From positions 4,063,361 to 4,127,360 of the forward strand of contig CM074805.1 in NCBI GenBank assembly GCA_037447605.1: DNA of 64,000 nucleotides, in the 5' to 3' direction. Source of the stretch: Zygnema circumcarinatum SAG 698-1b (lineage: Eukaryota > Plantae > Zygnematophyceae). The notes beneath the pieces are model-generated. The model made no database searches. It had not been told where the DNA came from and saw nothing but the letters and a program-made list of their open reading frames with translations. The position numbers and the translations under genes are program-made. Positions 47,662-57,002 of this stretch are shown here, in pieces (the stretch's first letter is position 1; every line of letters starts with the position of its first letter).

Positions 47662-48618
47662 GAGAAAGAGAAAGAGAAAAGGGAGGAAAGGGAGGGAGAG
47701 AGAGGGCAAGGACGAAGAGTTAGCGTGTACTGTACAGGTGATGCACGAGGAGCTCTCCCTCTCCATCTCCCTCTGTGTGAGTGGGGCCGGTTGCTCTTTG
47801 TTTGGCCGAACGGTTGAACTATTTTCTGAGGGATGAGACAAATGGTGGGAACGCAAACCCTTATTGTGAAAAAAAGAAGGAAACGAAGAAGAAAAAGAAA
47901 AAAAAAGAAAGACGTCCTCTCTGTTCGGGCTCACCCGCATGGCTCTCTGAAGGCTCTCCCTATGATTGCCGGTTCTGAAGGCGAGTGTGATGTCCATGTC
48001 CGTGTCATGTAAACGGCTGCACTTACTGTGTGGGGTTCTAGGTTGCTTTTCCACAGTATGGCATGTCAATTTGAGAGAGTACTACCTAGCTCGAACTCCT
48101 TGGCTATCGAGTTGGAAAGAGACACCAAAATCCGAAGGGAAAAGAAGAACTTCATGATTTACATTAGTTGCGCCCAATATCTCTTGTTGCCCTTTTCCTC
48201 GTCCAACCCTCCTCAGTTTTCACCTCGGTACAAGCAACATACGATGATGTTCCTAGAGTCAGCGATAGTGGCAGCAACAAAAAGTGATGAGGGAAAAAGT
48301 CATCCGTTGAGTACAGCTGTAAACGTTACAAGTGCTAGAATTTGGGCCTAAGAAGTCTGCCAGCCCATCCTGGTCCTAACTTACCACACTACCAAAGATA
48401 ACGATCGGTTTTCCCCAAAAAACTGAGCCTCAAAAACTCTGATGTCAACAGCTACAAAAGCTAAAGCTACAAAAGTTGTGACGCTAGAAACCCTTAATCG
48501 AGTACAAACCCGCATATGTACATCCCTGCAACAAGAGATTTGACCAGTGACTTGACCATTCGATTTCACAAGGCAGTGAGCTGCTACTCTTGCGGAGCTT
48601 GCAAGCCCATTTGTTGCC

Positions 48619-49701
48619 TCAGTCCTGCAAGGACGCCGACTTCTTCATCCGTTCCCTCTCCCTGCCGTCCTGTTGAGCTCTGCCTGCTCTGGTGCGTCTA
48701 GGAAACCCTGGTGAGGGCTCGAATTTGAAAAATCCTACAAGGAGCTGCAATAGAAACAGGTGGTGCAAAAAAGTTCCTTAGACAAGCCTTGATTAATGAA
48801 CTGGCTCGGTCCTTTTCAAATCGTAAACGACTAAGTGCAAGTTGAGAAGCAACAGTTGGCGTCAGCAATGAAATGAACTTCATTGGTTCCTGTCCCCGAC
48901 GAAACGACTCAAGTATTTTTCAATCTTGTTCACATGCATGCATGATCTGGCACAGGCTTATCTAAACTGAGTCATATCGAGACAAACCTCAAAAATCACA
49001 AATAAGGGAGTCATCAGGAGTGCCTGAGCAACATTATCCAGCAGAGCAGGAGCACGGCCCTGCAAGTTCCAAGTTCAAGAATGAAAGTCAGAATAAAAGA
49101 AGTCACTAGTCGCCAGCAATAAACGCACTTGCTCTGTGCTTTTGCAAACAACCTGTAAACGGCGAACAACAGTGGCAATTCCTCACTGCACATGATTTGC
49201 TCATCCTTGTTTCATCAGAATGGAGAAGTCCTTCGTCTCTCGAGTACCAATAAGCAATACTTAAACTGAACGAGGTTGAAATTCAACTGTTTTCCATACC
49301 TCGAAAACGTTACGGCCGAGAAATTGACCCATCCAACTTGTTGCATGGAGGACTAAAGCCACCTGCATGAGAACACAATAGCCAGCAAACTTCTTGTTAG
49401 TTTATTCACTCTGCACTCCTTTTGCCGGCATCCTCATGAGCTTAACTGCCAGTTTTCGATGCCGAGTTTTGAAGTCAAGCTTCTTAGTAGGCAATGTGCA
49501 TGAAACGATCCCAAGCAGTATCTTCCCTTTCTTGCCAAATGAAATTCTCGTAAATTCAGGTTCCCCCATGCAATTCTGAAGCATTCCTAATAAATTGGGT
49601 GTGAAACAGTTAGTCCGCTTATGGCCGCTACTAAGATACCAAAACTGGAAAGAGTAAAATCTCGTTTTCTCTCCCTACACCCCCTTCCCTCTCTCTCTCT
49701 G

Positions 49702-49732
<31 letters not shown>

Positions 49733-50112
49733 GCTTTCGTATGAAATCGCAGGCCTTAAAATCTCACCTTCCACGCCAGATCTCTGCCAAGATGATCGAC
49801 AAATGCATTGGCAGCTACCCAGCCAGTCAGAGCAAAAATGCTGCCAAGCCATCCCACTCTGGTGTCCAAAGTGATGAAATAAAAGGCGTAAAAGGCGGCC
49901 AAGAAGAAGGAAAAGTTGAACACCACGAATTCGTGCCCGGGAAAAGGCCCAAACGGAAGCGGCGTGGGCAAGAACGCAGGCGTGTACGTGCAAAACACGA
50001 GCGCACTGAACAGTATGGGCCATACAAAGATCATATGAATCGCCACGTTCATCTTACTATTGTAATACCCAGAGTAAAAGGCCAACTGCTCGTCCAAATC
50101 CAACAAGCTCAT
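48619..50112 (-). CDS. DUF962/Mpo1-like (2-hydroxy fatty acid dioxygenase family) membrane protein, 4 exons; may extend to ATG 50337, 50505 or 50637
   Basis: MSLLDLDEQLAFYSGYYNSKMNVAIHMIFVWPILF...|...WMGQFLGRNVFE|GRAPALLDNVAQALLMTPLFVIFE|LL...FEPSPGF... matches the family (LLDL...FY..YH.N..N..IH..FVWP; GQF.GHG.FEKRAPALLDN). Exons 50112-49768, 49362-49300, ~49060-48990 and ~48747-48619. Confidence 0.88.
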
Positions 50113-51599
50113 GTCCTCTTCGTTGCTCGCAGCAGCTGCCGCCAAACGCTTGTTTCCAGACTGCTCTGAATCCAAGGGCCCAGCCCTGTATGGAGGAAGT
50201 CTGGGCAGCAATCTGAACTTAGGTTTTGGGAAATTGCTCGCGCTTCCAAACCTGCGGAGCGGCTTGTCCTTGCCTGAGGAAGAAGACGACGCAAACGACG
50301 AGCCTGAAATGACGCGCTCCAGATTATTCTGTTTCATCAAGCATAAAATGTGTCTCGAACTCAAACTTTGGCTACCGCAGCTGCACTGCAACTTTCTCCC
50401 TCCCGTCTGGGCCGCAGCGTGAGCTCGTCCAAGCAGCGCTACAAGCTCCTCTGTGGCGAGAAATGCGGGCTTTGCAGACGTATACGCTCTCCAGGGATGC
50501 GCCATGGCGAGCGAGCTCAGGCCGCCATGGCCGGCCAAGGAGACGGTGGGGAGCCAGGCGCTGCCCGGAGCCGCCACGTGGCGCTGCCGTCCTCCCGCGT
50601 GGCCGTCTGCTCGCCCGCGGCCGGCGATGGGACTCATCCGCTGCCGGATTTCGCAGATTTCTTGAACTGAACGGTAACTTTGGCTGTGAATTAGAAAAGT
50701 CACATGTGTATTCGTACAGTTATTCGTGCGTAACTTCGTTATATGTAGAGCGTGTGAGCGTTAGTCAGAAGTTAATCACTGTACGGTCATAAGGAGACGT
50801 TCGCGTGGCCGGGCGGTCCAGGAGGTTTCACAGGTCGGAACAATGGTTGGACCGGCAACCATGGGATGTCCAGCGGTTCGCAACCCTTTGCCAATGGTCG
50901 CAACCATTGGCAACGGTTAACAGTCAGACCGACGGTTGGTCCCATGGTTGGTCCGCTCAGCGCGCCCCGTCTCGATCCGTTTGACCCGGCCAGGGTCCCG
51001 CCGGCAGGCAGCCGGTCAGCCAGTCAGCCGCCAACGGTTGGCCGCCCTTCGGCGCCGTTGCGACGAGAGGGCCCCGTGCACTCTCCCTGGCTTTCTACTC
51101 TCTCTCTCTTCTCTCTCTCTTCTTATCTTCTCTCTCTCTTCTCCGTCTCTCTCCATTGTGACTTTAGGAAGGGGCCGGTTGCGGGGCGGGTCGCATCCTT
51201 GACACGAGCCGCGGCGCCTGAACTGAGGGAGGGGAGGAGGGGGGGGGGGAGGGAGGGAGGGAGGGAGGGAGGGAGGGAGGGAGGGAGGGAGGCAGGGATG
51301 CAGAGAGGGAGGGAGGGGGAGATTTTGCAACCCTGAGGCCTCCTAACACGGGAGGTCAGCCTTGCATGCATGCTGCCGAGAAACTACCTCTGCGGGTTGA
51401 ATCTGGGGCCGCATTCTGCTGAACCTGGACCTTTAACCTGCTGGATTTTTCATCACTTGCCAAGCTAAATTTAATCAGGTTGATGGCTTCCGAGATTGAA
51501 ATTCCTAGAGTGTACTACTAGGGATAGCCGTAAAAGTATTTTTCGATTTTATAATTTGTTCTAAAAATAGGGCCACTTTCATAACACTTTTATACCAAT

Positions 51600-53200
51600 T
51601 TACAGCACTTCGGGATGATGTCACGTGCGTCATGCGACGTCACACCACGACACGCAGCAGAACGCCACGTGGCGTCATGCCACGTCACATTGTGTCATGT
51701 CACACGTCACGTCTCGAGGAGTTTTAAAACAAAACATATAAACATTTTGCTTTTGTCCATGTACATTTGATGGCCTCGCCATCGTGAGTTCAATGAATAT
51801 TTCCCCCGTTAAACATAAAAAGAAATATAAGAAGATCGCTCATCCAGGCATCCCTATGCACTCCAGTTCCATGTCCCTTCAGACGGCGGCCGCCGCCCGC
51901 CCGCCACCGGTCCAGTACAGCGGCTCCAGTTTCCCCCCCCCCCTGGCTGGCTGGCTAGCTGGCTGGTTGGTTCCCGCGAACGATTTGTGGTCAGTCGGTT
52001 AGTCACACGCCCGCGGACGCCACGCGGCCCTCCCCTCCAGGTCCCGCGGCCTGCGCTCCGGTCCCTCGCAAGTGGCCACCCAATCACGGCCTTCCACGTG
52101 TCGCACACGTGGCTCATGCAATCCCCGCAGGCGGGCGCGCAGCTTGTCGTTTGCGGCCTGCGCGATGAGTCAGGTCATGCGAGTGCTTGGCGGACAGACA
52201 CGTGTACGGCCGAACGTACGAACTGAGCGCGAGTTCACCACGTGGACGCAAGGCGACTGGCGGGCTCCACACTCCGGCCGCGTGGACCGCCCGCCCGCCC
52301 TTGAACCGATAGGGCTCACGGCCGGCTGGATGGTGCGCATGGCAGAGTTCCACGTGGCTCTGAGCGGGGCCTCCCTCCCTCCCTAGACCACCCGCGCATG
52401 CATGCATGCGCTCGTCCATGGCCGTGTCGCCGCCTGCCTTGGACCTGGTCTGGCTCGTGCCCACCGCTAACTTGTTCGTTGGGAAGGCGCCGGGTTGGTC
52501 GAAATGGGGAGAAAGGTGACAGCGAAGGGGCCTCGCCCGCCATCCAAGTATTGAACCAGGCGCCAAACCAACGCGATTAGTGGTTTTCCTTGCTAGGGAG
52601 CACCAGTCCGCCCCGTCCACGTCAAACCGTCCGATCTATCCATCCATGACGGGCGACAAATTTCCTACCCATCCAAAACTGTGACACAGACCCGCCTGCT
52701 AGGACGGCCCGGCCCCAACCCACGCACAGATCTGAGAACCTCCGACCGTCCGATCGAGCCCGCCCGCCCGCCCAGAGGACTGACTGACTGGGCCCGCGGC
52801 CGAAGAGCGGTTGCGCGCAAGCGACAAAAGATTCGTGGACAGTACAGTCGGTCAGCGTCTTTCGTACAGCCAGCAGAATCCGAACCGATTTGACCCTCGC
52901 GCCCGTTACGTCCGCCACTGCTGGCACGCCACGTGGCGCCGCTGTCCATATCCGCGCGTTACTCCAAAAGCTAGTCTCCCGAAAACGGCCAAAACGGATC
53001 GACCAGTGCGCATCAAACACGTGGCGTGCGACCGCTGGCTTGTCGCTACCCGCAACTGACCGTACGACGTCGCTGTCACCGCGCCACTGTCCGTACATCC
53101 CGCCCGGCGCGGCTGAACCGGGCGCCGTTGAATGCGCCAGGCTGGCGGCGTTACGGGGGGCCACGTGGCATGGGCAAGCGGAGCGGGAACAAGTCCGCGG
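51600..53200. promoter_or_regulatory. CpG/CACGTG-rich intergenic region between the divergent Mpo1-like and LysM genes
   Basis: Ten CACGTG sites at 51622, 51666, 52095, 52106, 52199, 52239, 52351, 52930, 53018 and 53162. I found no convincing protein product. Confidence 0.35.
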
Positions 53201-53269
53201 CCGCGGGTCGGATCGGGACGGGACGGGGGGGGTACTTGTCTACAGCCGCGCCCGCCTCTCCCATTTCCC

Positions 53270-53440
53270 CGCTCCCTCCTTTCCTCCCTCCCCTTCCTCC
53301 CTTCCTCCCTCTCTCCCTCTCTCCCTCCCTCCCTCCCTCCCTCCCTCCCTCCCTCCCTCCCTCCTCCCTCCCTCCCTCCCTCCTCCTCCCTCCCTCCTCC
53401 CTCCCTCCCTCCTCCTCCCTCCCTCCTCCTCCCTCCCTCC
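53270..53440. repeat. (CCTC)n/(CCT)n pyrimidine microsatellite upstream of the LysM ATG
   Basis: Directly visible. A complementary (GGGA)n tract lies at ~51248-51320. Confidence 0.9.
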
Positions 53441-53446
53441 ACCACA

Positions 53447-54896
53447 ATGCAGGCGAAAGCTGGGTTTCTAGGTGCCACGAGAGATCGCCGGCTGCGCTTG
53501 CAGACGGTGGCGGCTGTGTTATTGTTGCTCCTCCTGCGCCCAGGTAAGCGTGGTGCACTTTTATGAGAGAGATTGAGGGAGAGCACGCATATGTCTGTCT
53601 CTTTCCAGATAGATCGAGAAAGAGAGAGAGAAAGCGCGCAGCTGAAAGAGAGATAGAGCATGCAGCTGCCTGTCTCGTGTTCAGAATTGCCACTCCTCTC
53701 CTCTCCTCTCCTCTCCTCTCCTCTCCTCTCCTCTCCTCTCCTCTCCTCTCCTCTCCTCTCCTCTCCTCTCCTCTCCTCTCCTCTCCTCTCCTCTCCTCTC
53801 CTCTCCTCTCCTCTCCTCTCCTCTCCTCTCCTCTCCTCTCCTCTCCTCTCCTCTCTCTCCTCTCCTCTCTCTCCTCTCTCCTCTCCTCTCCTCTCCTCTC
53901 CTCTCCTCTCCCTCCTCTCCTCTCCTCTCCTCTCCTCTCTCTCCTCTCCTCTCTCTCCCTCTCTCTCCCTCTCCCTCTCCCTCTCCCTCTCCCTCCCTCT
54001 CCCTCCCTCTCCTCCTCTCCTCTCCTCTCCTCTCCTCTCCTCTCCTCTCCTCCTCTCCTCTCCTCTCCTCTCCCTCTCCCTCTCCCTCTCCCTCTCTCCC
54101 TCTCCCTCTCCCTCTCCTCCTCTCCCTCTCCCTCTCCCTCTCCCTCTCCTCCTCTCCTCTCCCTCTCCTCTCCTCCTCTCCCTCTGTCCCTCTCCTCTCC
54201 TCTCCTCACAGGCAAGCCTGGGGGCTGTGCTGCTGCAGGATCCAGCAGCGCCACGGGGCTGCTTAAGCGGTGCACAAAGACGGTGGTGGCGCGGAAGGAC
54301 GACACGTGTGTGGGCATGATGCAGAAGTACCGCATCTCCGCCTCGCTCTTCACCCTCCTCAACACGGGCCTCAACTGCAGCCCCCTGCAGGTGCGCAGGC
54401 CCCGCCGGCCTTGGCCCTCAATCTCTCCCGCTCTCCCCCCGGACCGGCCCTCCCTCTCTCTCCCTCTCTCTCTCGCCCTCTTCCCCCCTGCCGGCCTTGG
54501 CCCCCCTCCTCGCCCGCTCCCCCCCCCTGACCGTGTCTCTCCCTCTCTCTCCCTCTCTCTCCCTCTCTCTCCCTCTCACTCCCACTCTCTCCCTTTCCTC
54601 CAGGCCGGCCGGACCGTGTGCGTGGACGGGATCGTGCAGCCCACGCCGCGGAAGCTCCTTCTGACGGAGCCCCCGAGCGCGCAGGCCGGGCCCCTCGTGC
54701 AGAGAGAGGGAGAGGGAGAGGGAGAGGGAGCAGGAGGTGAGCATTGCTCACGGAGGAACACGCATTACGCATAGATAGCTTCATGCATGTGTGGGCTTGG
54801 AGCTCGCCTGCCACCTGCCTGGGTTTTCTTTGTTATCATTTGTTTTTAAGAAGTTCCAAATGGGTGTGGGGATGGCTGCCTGCAGGCTCACACTGA
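53447..54896 (+). CDS. Small secreted single-LysM-domain protein
   Basis: Exons 53447-53543, 54212-54390 and 54604-54736, plus 54886-54896 (or read-through to TAG 54774); all are in phase. It has a hydrophobic N-terminal stretch VAAVLLLLLL and the domain CTKTVVARKDDTCVGMMQKYRISASLFTLLNTGLNCSPLQAGRTVCV, which fits the 4-Cys LysM pattern C...(G/D)DTC......I.......N..(I/L).C..LQ.G..VCV. Confidence 0.78.
53693..54205. repeat. ~510 bp (CTCTC)n / (CCCTCT)n homopyrimidine microsatellite in LysM intron 1
   Basis: A perfect pentamer run to ~53850, then a degenerate penta/hexamer mix. Confidence 0.97.
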
Positions 54897-57002
54897 AGGC
54901 TCAGCAGTGGGAGGCTCAGCAGTGAGGCCCAGAACTTGTAAAGTGAAAAGCGTGTGAACATATTCAGCAGTGTTGTGCAGAGAACCAATAGGACGTGGAG
55001 CCAACCACTTACCAGCCAATCAAAGCGCTGCGAGTTGCAGCCCAAATAACGGCCACGCGCCGCCCTTGTTTTATAAGTAGCAGCGGCCCATGGGGCGGGC
55101 GCGCCTTGTTTTTTGGCTTTAGGGTTTTTTTTAGGGCCATGCTAGAGCATGGCATGGCATGGGCATGAGCTTCCGCTGCGCATGGACCATCCATGTGCCA
55201 AGGCGGAGGTTTGAACCCCTGACCGGGTCATGACCTAGGACCATTTTTTATGACCCTCCCCCCACCTCCCCCCCGTGACCAGGGTCCACGAATCACCAAT
55301 TGGTGGTTTAGGGTTTGCTGCATGTTACTGATAGAAAATAATCTTAGTTCCTAGGTTTAGTTTTTCCTAGTTCAATTTCGATTTTTTCGATGTCACTTTG
55401 TTAGTTCCGTTATATAGGATCTTATTCAAGCTGTGTATCCGTCTGCAGATTATGTCGAATGTTTGTTTTTTGGTTTCCTTCTCGACTTCTTAATTCTCTC
55501 ATTTGTGCTCTGTTCTCTACGTCTATTCGTACGCTGAGGGCCCTCATCGCAGTGAGTTTTGCAACNNNNNNNNNNCCCTCTCCTCCTCTCCCTCTCCCTC
55601 TCCCTCTCCTCCTCTCCCTCTGTCCCTCTCCTCTCCCTCTCCTCACAGGCAAGCCTGGGGGCTGTGCTGCTGCAGGATCCAGCAGCGCCACGGGGCTGCT
55701 TAAGCGGTGCACAAAGACGGTGGTGGCGCGGAAGGACGACACGTGTGTGGGCATGATGCAGAAGTACCGCATCTCCGCCTCGCTCTTCACCCTCCTCAAC
55801 ACGGGCCTCAACTGCAGCCCCCTGCAGGTGCGCAGGCCCCGCCGGCCTTGGCCCTCAATCTCTCCCGCTCTCCCCCCGGACCGGCCCTCCCTCTCTCTCC
55901 CTCTCTCTCTCGCCCTCTTCCCCCCTGCCGGCCTTGGCCCCCCTCCTCGCCCGCTCCCCCCCCCTGACCGTGTCTCTCCCTCTCTCTCCCTCTCTCTCCC
56001 TCTCTCTCCCTCTCACTCCCACTCTCTCCCTTTCCTCCAGGCCGGCCGGACCGTGTGCGTGGACGGGATCGTGCAGCCCACGCCGCGGAAGCTCCTTCTG
56101 ACGGAGCCCCCGAGCGCGCAGGCCGGGCCCCTCGTGCAGAGAGAGGGAGAGGGAGAGGGAGAGGGAGCAGGAGGTGAGCATTGCTCACGGAGGAACACGC
56201 ATTACGCATAGATAGCTTCATGCATGTGTGGGCTTGGAGCTCGCCTGCCACCTGCCTGGGTTTTCTTTGTTATCATTTGTTTTTAAGAAGTTCCAAATGG
56301 GTGTGGGGATGGCTGCCTGCAGGCTCACACTGAAGGCTCAGCAGTGGGAGGCTCAGCAGTGAGGCCCAGAACTTGTAAAGTGAAAAGCGTGTGAACATAT
56401 TCAGCAGTGTTGTGCAGAGAACCAATAGGACGTGGAGCCAACCACTTACCAGCCAATCAAAGCGCTGCGAGTTGCAGCCCAAATAACGGCCACGCGCCGC
56501 CCTTGTTTTATAAGTAGCAGCGGCCCATGGGGCGGGCGCGCCTTGTTTTTTGGCTTTAGGGTTTTTTTTAGGGCCATGCTAGAGCATGGCATGGCATGGG
56601 CATGAGCTTCCGCTGCGCATGGACCATCCATGTGCCAAGGCGGAGGTTTGAACCCCTGACCGGGTCATGACCTAGGACCATTTTTTATGACCCTCCCCCC
56701 ACCTCCCCCCCGTGACCAGGGTCCACGAATCACCAATTGGTGGTTTAGGGTTTGCTGCATGTTACTGATAGAAAATAATCTTAGTTCCTAGGTTTAGTTT
56801 TTCCTAGTTCAATTTCGATTTTTTCGATGTCACTTTGTTAGTTCCGTTATATAGGATCTTATTCAAGCTGTGTATCCGTCTGCAGATTATGTCGAATGTT
56901 TGTTTTTTGGTTTCCTTCTCGACTTCTTAATTCTCTCATTTGTGCTCTGTTCTCTACGTCTATTCGTACGCTGAGGGCCCTCATCGCAGTGAGTTTTGCA
57001 AC
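54139..57002 (+). repeat. Direct duplication with 1,437 bp period (54139-55565 and 55576-57002) across an assembly gap
   Basis: The unique sequence appears identical between copies (for example, ORFs 54371 and 55808 are identical). The copies are separated by 10 N. Confidence 0.93.
55566..55575. other. Assembly gap (10 N)
   Basis: Ns are visible in the sequence. Confidence 1.

What the first reader, a model, noticed from the sequence alone, without database searches (positions are those of the whole stretch)
48619..50112. Intact Mpo1/DUF962 homologue that has lost two of its three conserved His residues
Seen in sequence: the family motif FY..YH reads FYSGYY (Tyr codon 50062-50064), and GQF.GHG.FE reads GQFLGRNVFE (Arg codon 49312-49314). 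Only the IH histidine (50035-50037) remains. All four exons are open with canonical splice sites, so it does not look like a decayed pseudogene. Established knowledge: yeast Mpo1 is an Fe2+-dependent 2-hydroxy fatty acid dioxygenase, and conserved His residues are implicated in its catalysis. Inference: this copy is a pseudoenzyme or neofunctionalised paralogue (lipid sensor, scaffold or regulator) rather than an alpha-oxidation enzyme.
Basis: partly seen in the sequence, partly recalled or inferred. Interest (0 to 1): 0.7.

Follow-up and report, generated by a model that had tools for sequence, protein, structure and literature searches.

The report
Expressed Mpo1-like gene lacking iron-binding histidines
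A streptophyte alga transcribes and correctly splices a membrane protein of the Mpo1 fatty-acid dioxygenase family in which two of the family's three invariant histidines are replaced by Tyr and Arg; the same two sites were lost independently in other lineages, so this is probably a recurring non-enzymatic offshoot of the enzyme, not a dead gene or an error.

Summary
The minus-strand gene has four exons, and RNA contigs from four runs of four studies confirm them base for base. It encodes an Mpo1/DUF962 protein reading FYSGYY (Tyr codon 50062-50064) and GQFLGRNVFE (Arg codon 49312-49314). Only the IH histidine (50035-50037) is kept.

In 73-268 family members the only invariant columns are these three His plus one Asn.

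- **Not a decaying gene:** it is expressed and evolves no faster than its closest relative P0003, which keeps all three His.
- **The pattern recurs:** a metagenomic algal relative (L004) has His1->Asp and His3->Arg. A separate old clade (L007-L010) has Arg at both sites, encoded by both Arg codon families, so Arg is selected there. His2 is always kept.
- **Gene model correction:** A conserved N-terminal extension (KFRLLPRLPPY) lies in frame upstream.
- **"Paralogue" is not shown:** the gene sits in the algal branch of the streptophyte Mpo1 tree, and I could not search for a second copy.

Best reading (0.6): a selected protein that has lost Fe2+-dependent dioxygenase activity. This is a new variant of a known kind.

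The parts
48200..50595 (-). Transcribed span seen in RNA contigs (minimum extent; the 3' end runs to or beyond 48200, the 5' end reaches at least 50595)
   Evidence: table 8: contigs cover 48200-48746 and 49765-50595
50113..50505 (-). In-frame N-terminal extension (131 codons from ATG 50505; alternative in-frame ATG at 50337); no Pfam match; the matching part of the P0003 model is disordered
   Evidence: AF2 model of P0003 has pLDDT 50-60 over its extension
50188..50220 (-). Short motif KFRLLPRLPPY in the extension, shared with P0003 (RFRLLPKFPPF), L004 (NLFPKAFPL) and L005 (SLVPKVFPL)
50517..50528 (-). Three-codon upstream ORF (ATG GCG GCC TGA) in the 5' leader, in a strong Kozak-like context
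49768..50112 (-). Mpo1-domain part of coding exon 1 (115 codons); holds His1 (now Tyr) and His2
50062..50064 (-). Tyr codon TAC at the invariant His1 position (family motif FY..YH); one transition from CAC
50035..50037 (-). Retained His2 codon CAT (motif N..IH)
49363..49767 (-). Intron 1 (405 nt, GT..AG) with a (GA)n/(GACA)n microsatellite at about 49678-49740
49300..49362 (-). Coding exon 2 (21 codons), VALVLHATSWMGQFLGRNVFE
49312..49314 (-). Arg codon CGT at the invariant His3 position (motif QF.GH..FE); one transition from CAT
49060..49299 (-). Intron 2 (240 nt)
48988..49059 (-). Coding exon 3 (24 codons), GRAPALLDN...LMTPLFVIFE; family motif kept
48745..48987 (-). Intron 3 (243 nt)
48619..48744 (-). 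Coding exon 4 (41 codons plus TGA at 48619-48621); ends ...SLQD like P0003 and P0001

Best explanation
This is a real, transcribed, correctly spliced member of the Mpo1/DUF962 family in a streptophyte alga. Its canonical three-histidine metal site has been dismantled (His1->Tyr, His3->Arg, His2 kept), while the rest of the fold and its conserved motifs are kept. It therefore most likely no longer works as an Fe2+-dependent 2-hydroxy fatty acid dioxygenase and is maintained for another, non-redox role in the membrane. The mechanism I consider most likely is inferred, not shown: the former substrate pocket still binds a lipid carboxylate or head group, and the Arg guanidinium takes the place of the metal cation as the positive partner. 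The protein would then bind, sense or hand over 2-hydroxy or other acyl lipids, or regulate a partner, instead of oxidising them. What is shown: the sequence, the splicing, the expression, the invariance of the lost residues, the absence of rate acceleration, and the independent recurrence of the same two-site loss with Arg at His3. What is inferred: the loss of activity and the nature of the retained function.
For: The sequence and splicing are confirmed in four runs with no variant. His1, Asn22, His2 and His3 are the only invariant columns in 73 diverse members, and they are 100% conserved in 168 full-length members. Of 31 sites that are at least 90% conserved in the family, the window protein departs at only 5, and two of those departures are shared with its relatives. 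It keeps N22, W125, Q128, F129, G131, E136, R138, P140, P154 and E160. Its terminal branch (0.26) equals that of the His-intact relative P0003 (0.23-0.25). Polarised changes number 10 for the window and 14 for P0003, and the window's are mostly conservative. Pairwise dN is 0.22 with saturated dS, giving omega about 0.08-0.2. In my branch model, omega on the window branch is 0.11, no different from the background 0.07. Omega = 1 is rejected for the two His-poor algal branches taken together (LRT 8.3). The pattern recurs: L004 has Asp and Arg (CGC) at the two sites. Clade R (L007, L008, L009, L010) has Arg at His1 in all four genes. It has Arg at His3 in all three genes where exon 2 is on the contig. 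These genes have open reading frames in every exon on the contigs, the same exon layout (L007 carries all four exons) and 42-53% mutual identity. The Arg codons there are AGA/CGC at His1 and CGT/AGA/CGA at His3, so Arg is kept across synonymous turnover. His2 is kept in every case.
Against: No biochemical data exist for this protein. The claim that the three His are needed for Mpo1 activity rests on my recollection of Mori et al. 2020 (J Lipid Res 61:1104), which is not in the held library. Neutrality on the window's own branch is not rejected on its own (LRT 2.5, p about 0.11). The time of the His loss is unknown, so a recent inactivation could look the same. H->Y and H->R are the two transition changes from CAY, so mutation bias alone could give these residues in a young loss. 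P0003, which keeps the three His, has itself lost the 99%- and 98%-conserved E136 and R138. That means the whole subclade may be under altered constraint, and the His loss may be a symptom and not the cause. No solved structure or fold relative exists to check the site geometry.
Confidence: 0.6

Rival explanations
1. The enzyme was inactivated recently. The gene is still transcribed and spliced but is no longer under selection and is on its way to becoming a pseudogene. Its alpha-oxidation role would have been lost, or taken over by another route such as a 2-hydroxyacyl-CoA lyase or a second Mpo1 copy.
For: Both replacements are single transitions from His codons. Neutrality on the window branch alone is not rejected (LRT 2.5). 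No closer relative than 66-75% identity is available to date the loss. The whole subclade shows erosion of motif residues (P0003 E136Q and R138Q; L005 with many changes).
Against: There are no stops, frameshifts or splice-site defects. Spliced mRNA is abundant in four runs. The branch is no longer than that of the His-intact sister, and its other changes are mostly conservative. The same two-site loss persists in intact genes elsewhere, with Arg under selection in clade R. Hitting two of the three invariant His while sparing nearly all other conserved sites is not what random decay predicts.
Confidence: 0.2
2. It is still a catalyst, with a rebuilt site. Tyr17, His26 and another residue would bind a metal, perhaps Fe3+. 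Candidates for the third ligand are E136, or H107 and H121, which are shared by the five aligned algal relatives. Alternatively the chemistry has become metal-independent.
For: The pocket residues around the site are kept (Q128, F129, G131, E136, R138). Tyr and Asp (in L004) can be metal ligands. H107 and H121 are present in the window protein, P0003, P0001, L004 and L005.
Against: Arg is not a metal ligand, and it is the replacement at His3 in all three independent losses. Clade R has Arg at both sites. H121 lies 11 residues, about three helical turns, from His3 in the modelled helix of P0003, which is too far to stand in for it. No member of the family with such a site has been characterised, to my knowledge.
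Confidence: 0.12
3. The two codons are an artefact, or a mutation private to one laboratory strain.
For: All holders carry one organism label and may be one cultured strain. The four runs show no polymorphism at all over 2.5 kb.
Against: Runs from four studies agree with the assembly at every base, at depths of 48-370. Six DNA runs hold 98-99% of the sampled words. Two private hits on exactly the two invariant His are very unlikely by chance.
Confidence: 0.04

Closest known systems
Saccharomyces cerevisiae Mpo1 (YGL010W), Fe2+-dependent 2-hydroxy fatty acid dioxygenase; Pfam PF06127 Mpo1-like/DUF962
   Same: Same Pfam family. Same motif skeleton FY..Y(H), N..IH, W..QF.G(H)..FE.R.PA, MAP.F. Small multi-helix membrane protein (model of the relative P0003). 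The enzyme's role is described in PMC10398889 and PMC9624242.
   Different: His1 is Tyr and His3 is Arg. There is a probable N-terminal extension of 75-130 residues that the yeast and most plant proteins lack. Activity is untested.
Arabidopsis MHP1 and MHL (Ushio et al. 2023, Plant Sci 336:111840; cited in PMC13584405, not read here) and the canonical land-plant Mpo1 proteins
   Same: Same streptophyte clade (98* support). Same length of the core (about 200 aa), and the same intron after ...AWK, judged from the many truncated gene models.
   Different: All 117 land-plant hits that went into the background set keep the three His and mostly end in a di-lysine-like KKxx tail. The window protein ends ...KKSASLQD and has lost two His.
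P0003 (Logan RNA contigs SRR8128904/5/8; loci L001-L003), the nearest relative
   Same: 75% identity over exon 1 and 66-69% over the core. Same N-terminal motif, same ...SLQD end, same branch length.
   Different: It keeps His1, His2 and His3 but has E136Q and R138Q. It comes from another organism: AT-rich 5' UTR and GC3 of 0.43 against 0.58.
Clade R: unnamed Mpo1-like genes on Logan, JGI, NCBI and ENA metagenome contigs (L007/P0133, L008/P0166, L009/P0209, L010/P0213)
   Same: Loss of His1 and His3 with His2 kept. Arg at His3. Open reading frames in every exon on the contigs, with the same exon layout (L007 carries all four exons).
   Different: A separate, older clade (98/98 support, stem 0.44) outside the algal group. 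His1 is Arg, not Tyr. The loss is an independent event.

Membership tests
Mpo1-like / DUF962 sequence family (PF06127) | Profile match above Pfam's gathering score | tested here: met
   Exon 1 alone scores 25.5 bits against a cut-off of 24, E 1.4e-5. The joined protein was not scanned.
Mpo1-like / DUF962 sequence family (PF06127) | Near-invariant non-His motif residues (N22, W125, Q128, G131, E136, R138, P140, P154, E160) | tested here: met
   All are present in the window protein.
Mpo1-like / DUF962 sequence family (PF06127) | Placement inside the family tree | tested here: met
   It lies inside the streptophyte clade, in an algal group with P0004, P0001, P0003, L004 and L005, with support 98-100.
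Fe2+-dependent 2-hydroxy fatty acid dioxygenases (yeast Mpo1 type) | Three invariant histidines (FY..YH, N..IH, QF.GH) | tested here: not met
   Only His2 is present; His1 is Tyr and His3 is Arg. These columns are invariant in 73 and in 168 members.
Fe2+-dependent 2-hydroxy fatty acid dioxygenases (yeast Mpo1 type) | Fe2+ binding and alpha-oxidation of 2-OH fatty acids | not testable with these tools
   This needs complementation of yeast mpo1-delta, or an in vitro assay with metal analysis.
Fe2+-dependent 2-hydroxy fatty acid dioxygenases (yeast Mpo1 type) | Spatial clustering of the three His in the fold | tested here: inconclusive
   The AF2 model of P0003 is confident (pLDDT 84.6). It places His1 and His2 at the start of helix 77-98 and His3 at the end of helix 141-193. 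Coordinates are not returned, and there is no solved relative.
Clade R (Arg/Arg Mpo1-like genes) | Common descent with L007-L010 | tested here: not met
   The window gene lies in a different, well-supported clade. The likeness is convergent.
Processed or decaying pseudogene | Stops, frameshifts, broken splice sites, no transcript, accelerated branch | tested here: not met
   Open frame, GT..AG introns used in RNA, exon depth 48-370, and a branch equal to the His-intact sister.

The most novel reading that the evidence does not exclude
Streptophytes have repeatedly turned the iron dioxygenase Mpo1 into a metal-free membrane protein. This happened at least three times: in this alga, in the L004 lineage and in clade R. 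In each case Arg replaces a metal-binding His, and the old substrate pocket would then bind a lipid carboxylate without oxidising it. Such a protein could be a sensor, a carrier, or a regulator of sphingolipid 2-hydroxy fatty acid turnover. The window gene would be a young, experimentally tractable instance.
Probability: 0.3. Interest if true: 0.7.

Novelty: new variant of a known kind. Interest (0 to 1): 0.55.

Why it matters
Mpo1 is the only characterised member of a family spread across bacteria, fungi, protists and plants, and its catalytic site is defined only by three conserved histidines. Intact, expressed relatives that have given up two of them along the same path in several lineages show that the fold has a second, non-oxidative use. 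They also give a natural test of which residues bind iron. For sphingolipid biology in the algal relatives of land plants, the finding raises two questions: whether 2-hydroxy fatty acid alpha-oxidation is present at all in this alga, and what regulates it. The old Arg/Arg clade, abundant in environmental data, is unannotated and would be mislabelled as '2-hydroxy-palmitic acid dioxygenase' by homology transfer.

Tried and rejected
- **Key papers not held.** Mori 2020 (PMC7328046) and Seki 2019 (PMC6379581) are not in the library, so the role of the three His is cited from memory.
- **Word-index protein searches** did not return the window's own protein or any relative closer than P0003. All three searches are used.
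- **JGI metagenome scan** with an exon-1 alignment found no relative.
- **Second copy.** None lies in the 64-kb window. The rest of the genome cannot be searched with these tools. Searching the scan's notes by sequence and by words gave nothing on Mpo1.
- **Ancient-paralogue idea** (window + L004 as one His-poor lineage, P0003 + L005 as the other). It is disfavoured but not formally rejected (delta lnL 13.6, p-AU 0.077).
- **Pairwise dN/dS.** dS is saturated. In my own branch-model code omega = 1 is not rejected for the window branch alone.
- **Structure.** No solved relative by sequence or by Foldseek. The model gives no coordinates, so the site geometry could not be measured.
- **P0265**, an apparent all-His-to-Tyr member, was rejected as an artefact of C-to-T converted reads.
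- **Joined spliced protein.** It was never typed or sent to any search, family-scan or folding tool. Those steps were done exon by exon by reference, or on the relative P0003. Exons were joined only inside scripts, from /data/window.fa, for local alignments, trees and codon counts.

Full report
**What is there.**
- Reading the minus strand of 48300-50500 and translating by reference gives four coding pieces: 49768-50112, 49300-49362, 48988-49059 and 48619-48744 (TGA at 48619-48621). The introns are GT..AG.
- Exon 1 reads ...LAFYSGYYNSKMNVAIHM... and exon 2 reads VALVLHATSWMGQFLGRNVFE.
- Exon 1 alone passes the Pfam gathering score for PF06127 Mpo1-like.

**Is it real and expressed?**
- One run search found 20 holders under a single organism label.
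- I laid four runs from four studies on 48200-50700. All four behave as RNA assemblies. They carry the three predicted splice joints exactly (skips of 405, 240 and 243 nt). Word depth is about 48-370 on exons and about 5-30 on introns. No base difference or indel was reported.
- X8 is labelled 'DNA?' only as a guess. Its depth pattern and 36 Mb of contigs are those of a transcriptome.
- The two odd codons are therefore not assembly errors, and the transcript is processed normally.

**Gene model.**
- The contigs run upstream to 50540-50595. The frame is open upstream of 50112, with in-frame ATGs at 50337 and at 50505 (context GCCATGG). A three-codon uORF lies at 50528, and there is one short out-of-frame ATG.
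- The nearest relative P0003 has no Met at the domain start. It begins 61 residues earlier, and its extension carries RFRLLPKFPPF against the window's KFRLLPRLPPY (50188-50220).
- The two metagenomic relatives also lack a Met at the domain start and have a similar motif.
- Translation therefore most likely starts upstream, giving a protein of 276 or 332 residues instead of 201.
- The extension has no Pfam match. The matching part of the P0003 model is disordered.

**How unusual are the two replacements?**
- Among 267 members fetched, His1 is H in 257 and His2 in 264. The non-His rows I inspected at His3 are gene models that read on into the intron.
- In 168 full-length members the three His are 100% conserved.
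- In a 73-sequence diverse alignment the only invariant columns are His1, Asn22, His2 and His3.
- That these His matter for yeast Mpo1 activity is from my memory of Mori et al. 2020, which I could not read. That Mpo1 is an Fe2+-dependent 2-OH fatty acid dioxygenase is stated in PMC10398889 and PMC9624242.

**Relatives and tree.**
- The closest proteins are P0003 (RNA contigs of another organism; 75% identity in exon 1; all three His), P0001 (EukProt transcriptome; 57%; canonical), and two metagenome contigs, L004 and L005.
- Exon 2 and exon 3 of L004 and L005 have the same lengths as in the window.
- Careful trees place the gene in the streptophyte clade, in an algal group: P0004 + (P0001 + (window, P0003, (L004, L005))), with 98-100 support.
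- Earlier notes of this scan call the genome a streptophyte alga. My tree agrees with that, but I did not identify the species.

**Signs of constraint.**
- The window's end branch (0.26) equals that of P0003 (0.23-0.25).
- Changes that can be polarised number 10 for the window and 14 for P0003. The window's are mostly conservative, apart from H17Y, G133N, A153T and a few others.
- Of 31 family-conserved sites the window departs at 5, two of them shared with its relatives.
- Against the P0003 coding sequence, dN is 0.22 with saturated dS.
- My own branch model gives omega 0.08 overall and 0.11 on the window branch. Omega = 1 is not rejected for that branch alone (LRT 2.5). It is rejected for the window and L004 branches together (LRT 8.3).
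- There is therefore no sign of decay, but no proof of selection after the loss either.

**Recurrence.**
- L004 has His1->Asp and His3->Arg (CGC), while its sister L005 and P0003 keep both His. A tree forcing window + L004 together is 13.6 log units worse (p-AU 0.077). Parallel loss is therefore favoured.
- I followed the few other members with a non-His at His1 and found a separate clade, L007, L008, L009 and L010 (98/98 support, long stem).
- In that clade His1 is Arg in all four genes. His3 is Arg in all three genes where exon 2 is on the contig. His2 is kept. The reading frames are open in every exon on the contigs, and L007 carries all four exons in the same layout.
- Its Arg codons are AGA/CGC at His1 and CGT/AGA/CGA at His3. 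Arg is thus preserved across codon families at 42-53% protein identity.
- One of its 90% clusters has 18 members from NCBI, JGI, ENA and Logan.
- The same two-site loss, always with Arg at His3 and His2 kept, has therefore arisen at least three times, and at least once it has been held for a long time.

**Interpretation.**
- The canonical metal site cannot form, so loss of the Fe2+ dioxygenase activity is the most likely consequence.
- Persistence, expression and the parallel cases argue for a retained, different function.
- I propose that the kept pocket (Q128, F129, G131, E136, R138, MAP.F) still binds a lipid carboxylate, with Arg replacing the metal cation. This is inference.
- Rivals are a young inactivation drifting toward a pseudogene, a rebuilt catalytic site, or a strain-private mutation.
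- 'Paralogue' is not shown. No second copy lies in the window, and the genome could not be searched.

**Limits.**
- There is no solved structure or fold match.
- The joined spliced protein was not sent to any search or fold tool. The model is of P0003.
- I found nothing on His-less Mpo1-like proteins in the held literature.

Noticed in passing
window 50113-50505 (motif at 50188-50220): In-frame N-terminal extension with a short motif, (K/R)FRLLP(R/K)xPP(Y/F), shared by the window, P0003, L004 and L005 but absent from P0001 and the land-plant proteins. Its function is unknown. It marks the fast-evolving algal subclade in which motif residues erode.
   Followed up: partly
window 50517-50528: Three-codon uORF (MAA-stop) in a strong Kozak-like context, 11 nt upstream of the in-frame ATG at 50505.
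   Followed up: no
window about 50397: One contig of run X8 leaves the window sequence at 50397 and continues for 255 nt that occur nowhere in the 64-kb window. It may be an alternative distant 5' exon or a chimeric contig.
   Followed up: partly
L007:1204-2700, L008:519-875, L009:332-1140, L010:3001-4058: An unannotated old clade of Mpo1-like genes with Arg at both His1 and His3, open reading frames and the same exon layout. It is frequent on metagenome contigs, possibly from mosses or other streptophytes, judged only by its nearest canonical relatives.
   Followed up: partly
P0003 (L001:336-1115): The His-intact nearest relative has replaced the 99%-conserved Glu of ..FE and the 98%-conserved Arg of G-R-APALL with Gln (FQGQAPALL), so it too may not be a standard enzyme.
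   Followed up: partly
L005:2462-2973: The metagenomic relative keeps the three His but has rewritten neighbouring motifs (CHYFFHRVYE; GNAPVVLHQ). It is the longest branch of the algal group.
   Followed up: no
P0265: A database protein with His->Tyr, Ala->Val and Pro->Phe throughout the N-terminal motif. The pattern fits C-to-T converted (bisulfite-type) reads, not a real variant.
   Followed up: no
window 49678-49740: A (GA)n/(GACA)n microsatellite inside intron 1. The read tool skipped it as a repeat.
   Followed up: no
window 48001-56000: This 8-kb block has 56% G+C and a strong negative GC skew, against 45-50% G+C in the rest of the window.
   Followed up: no
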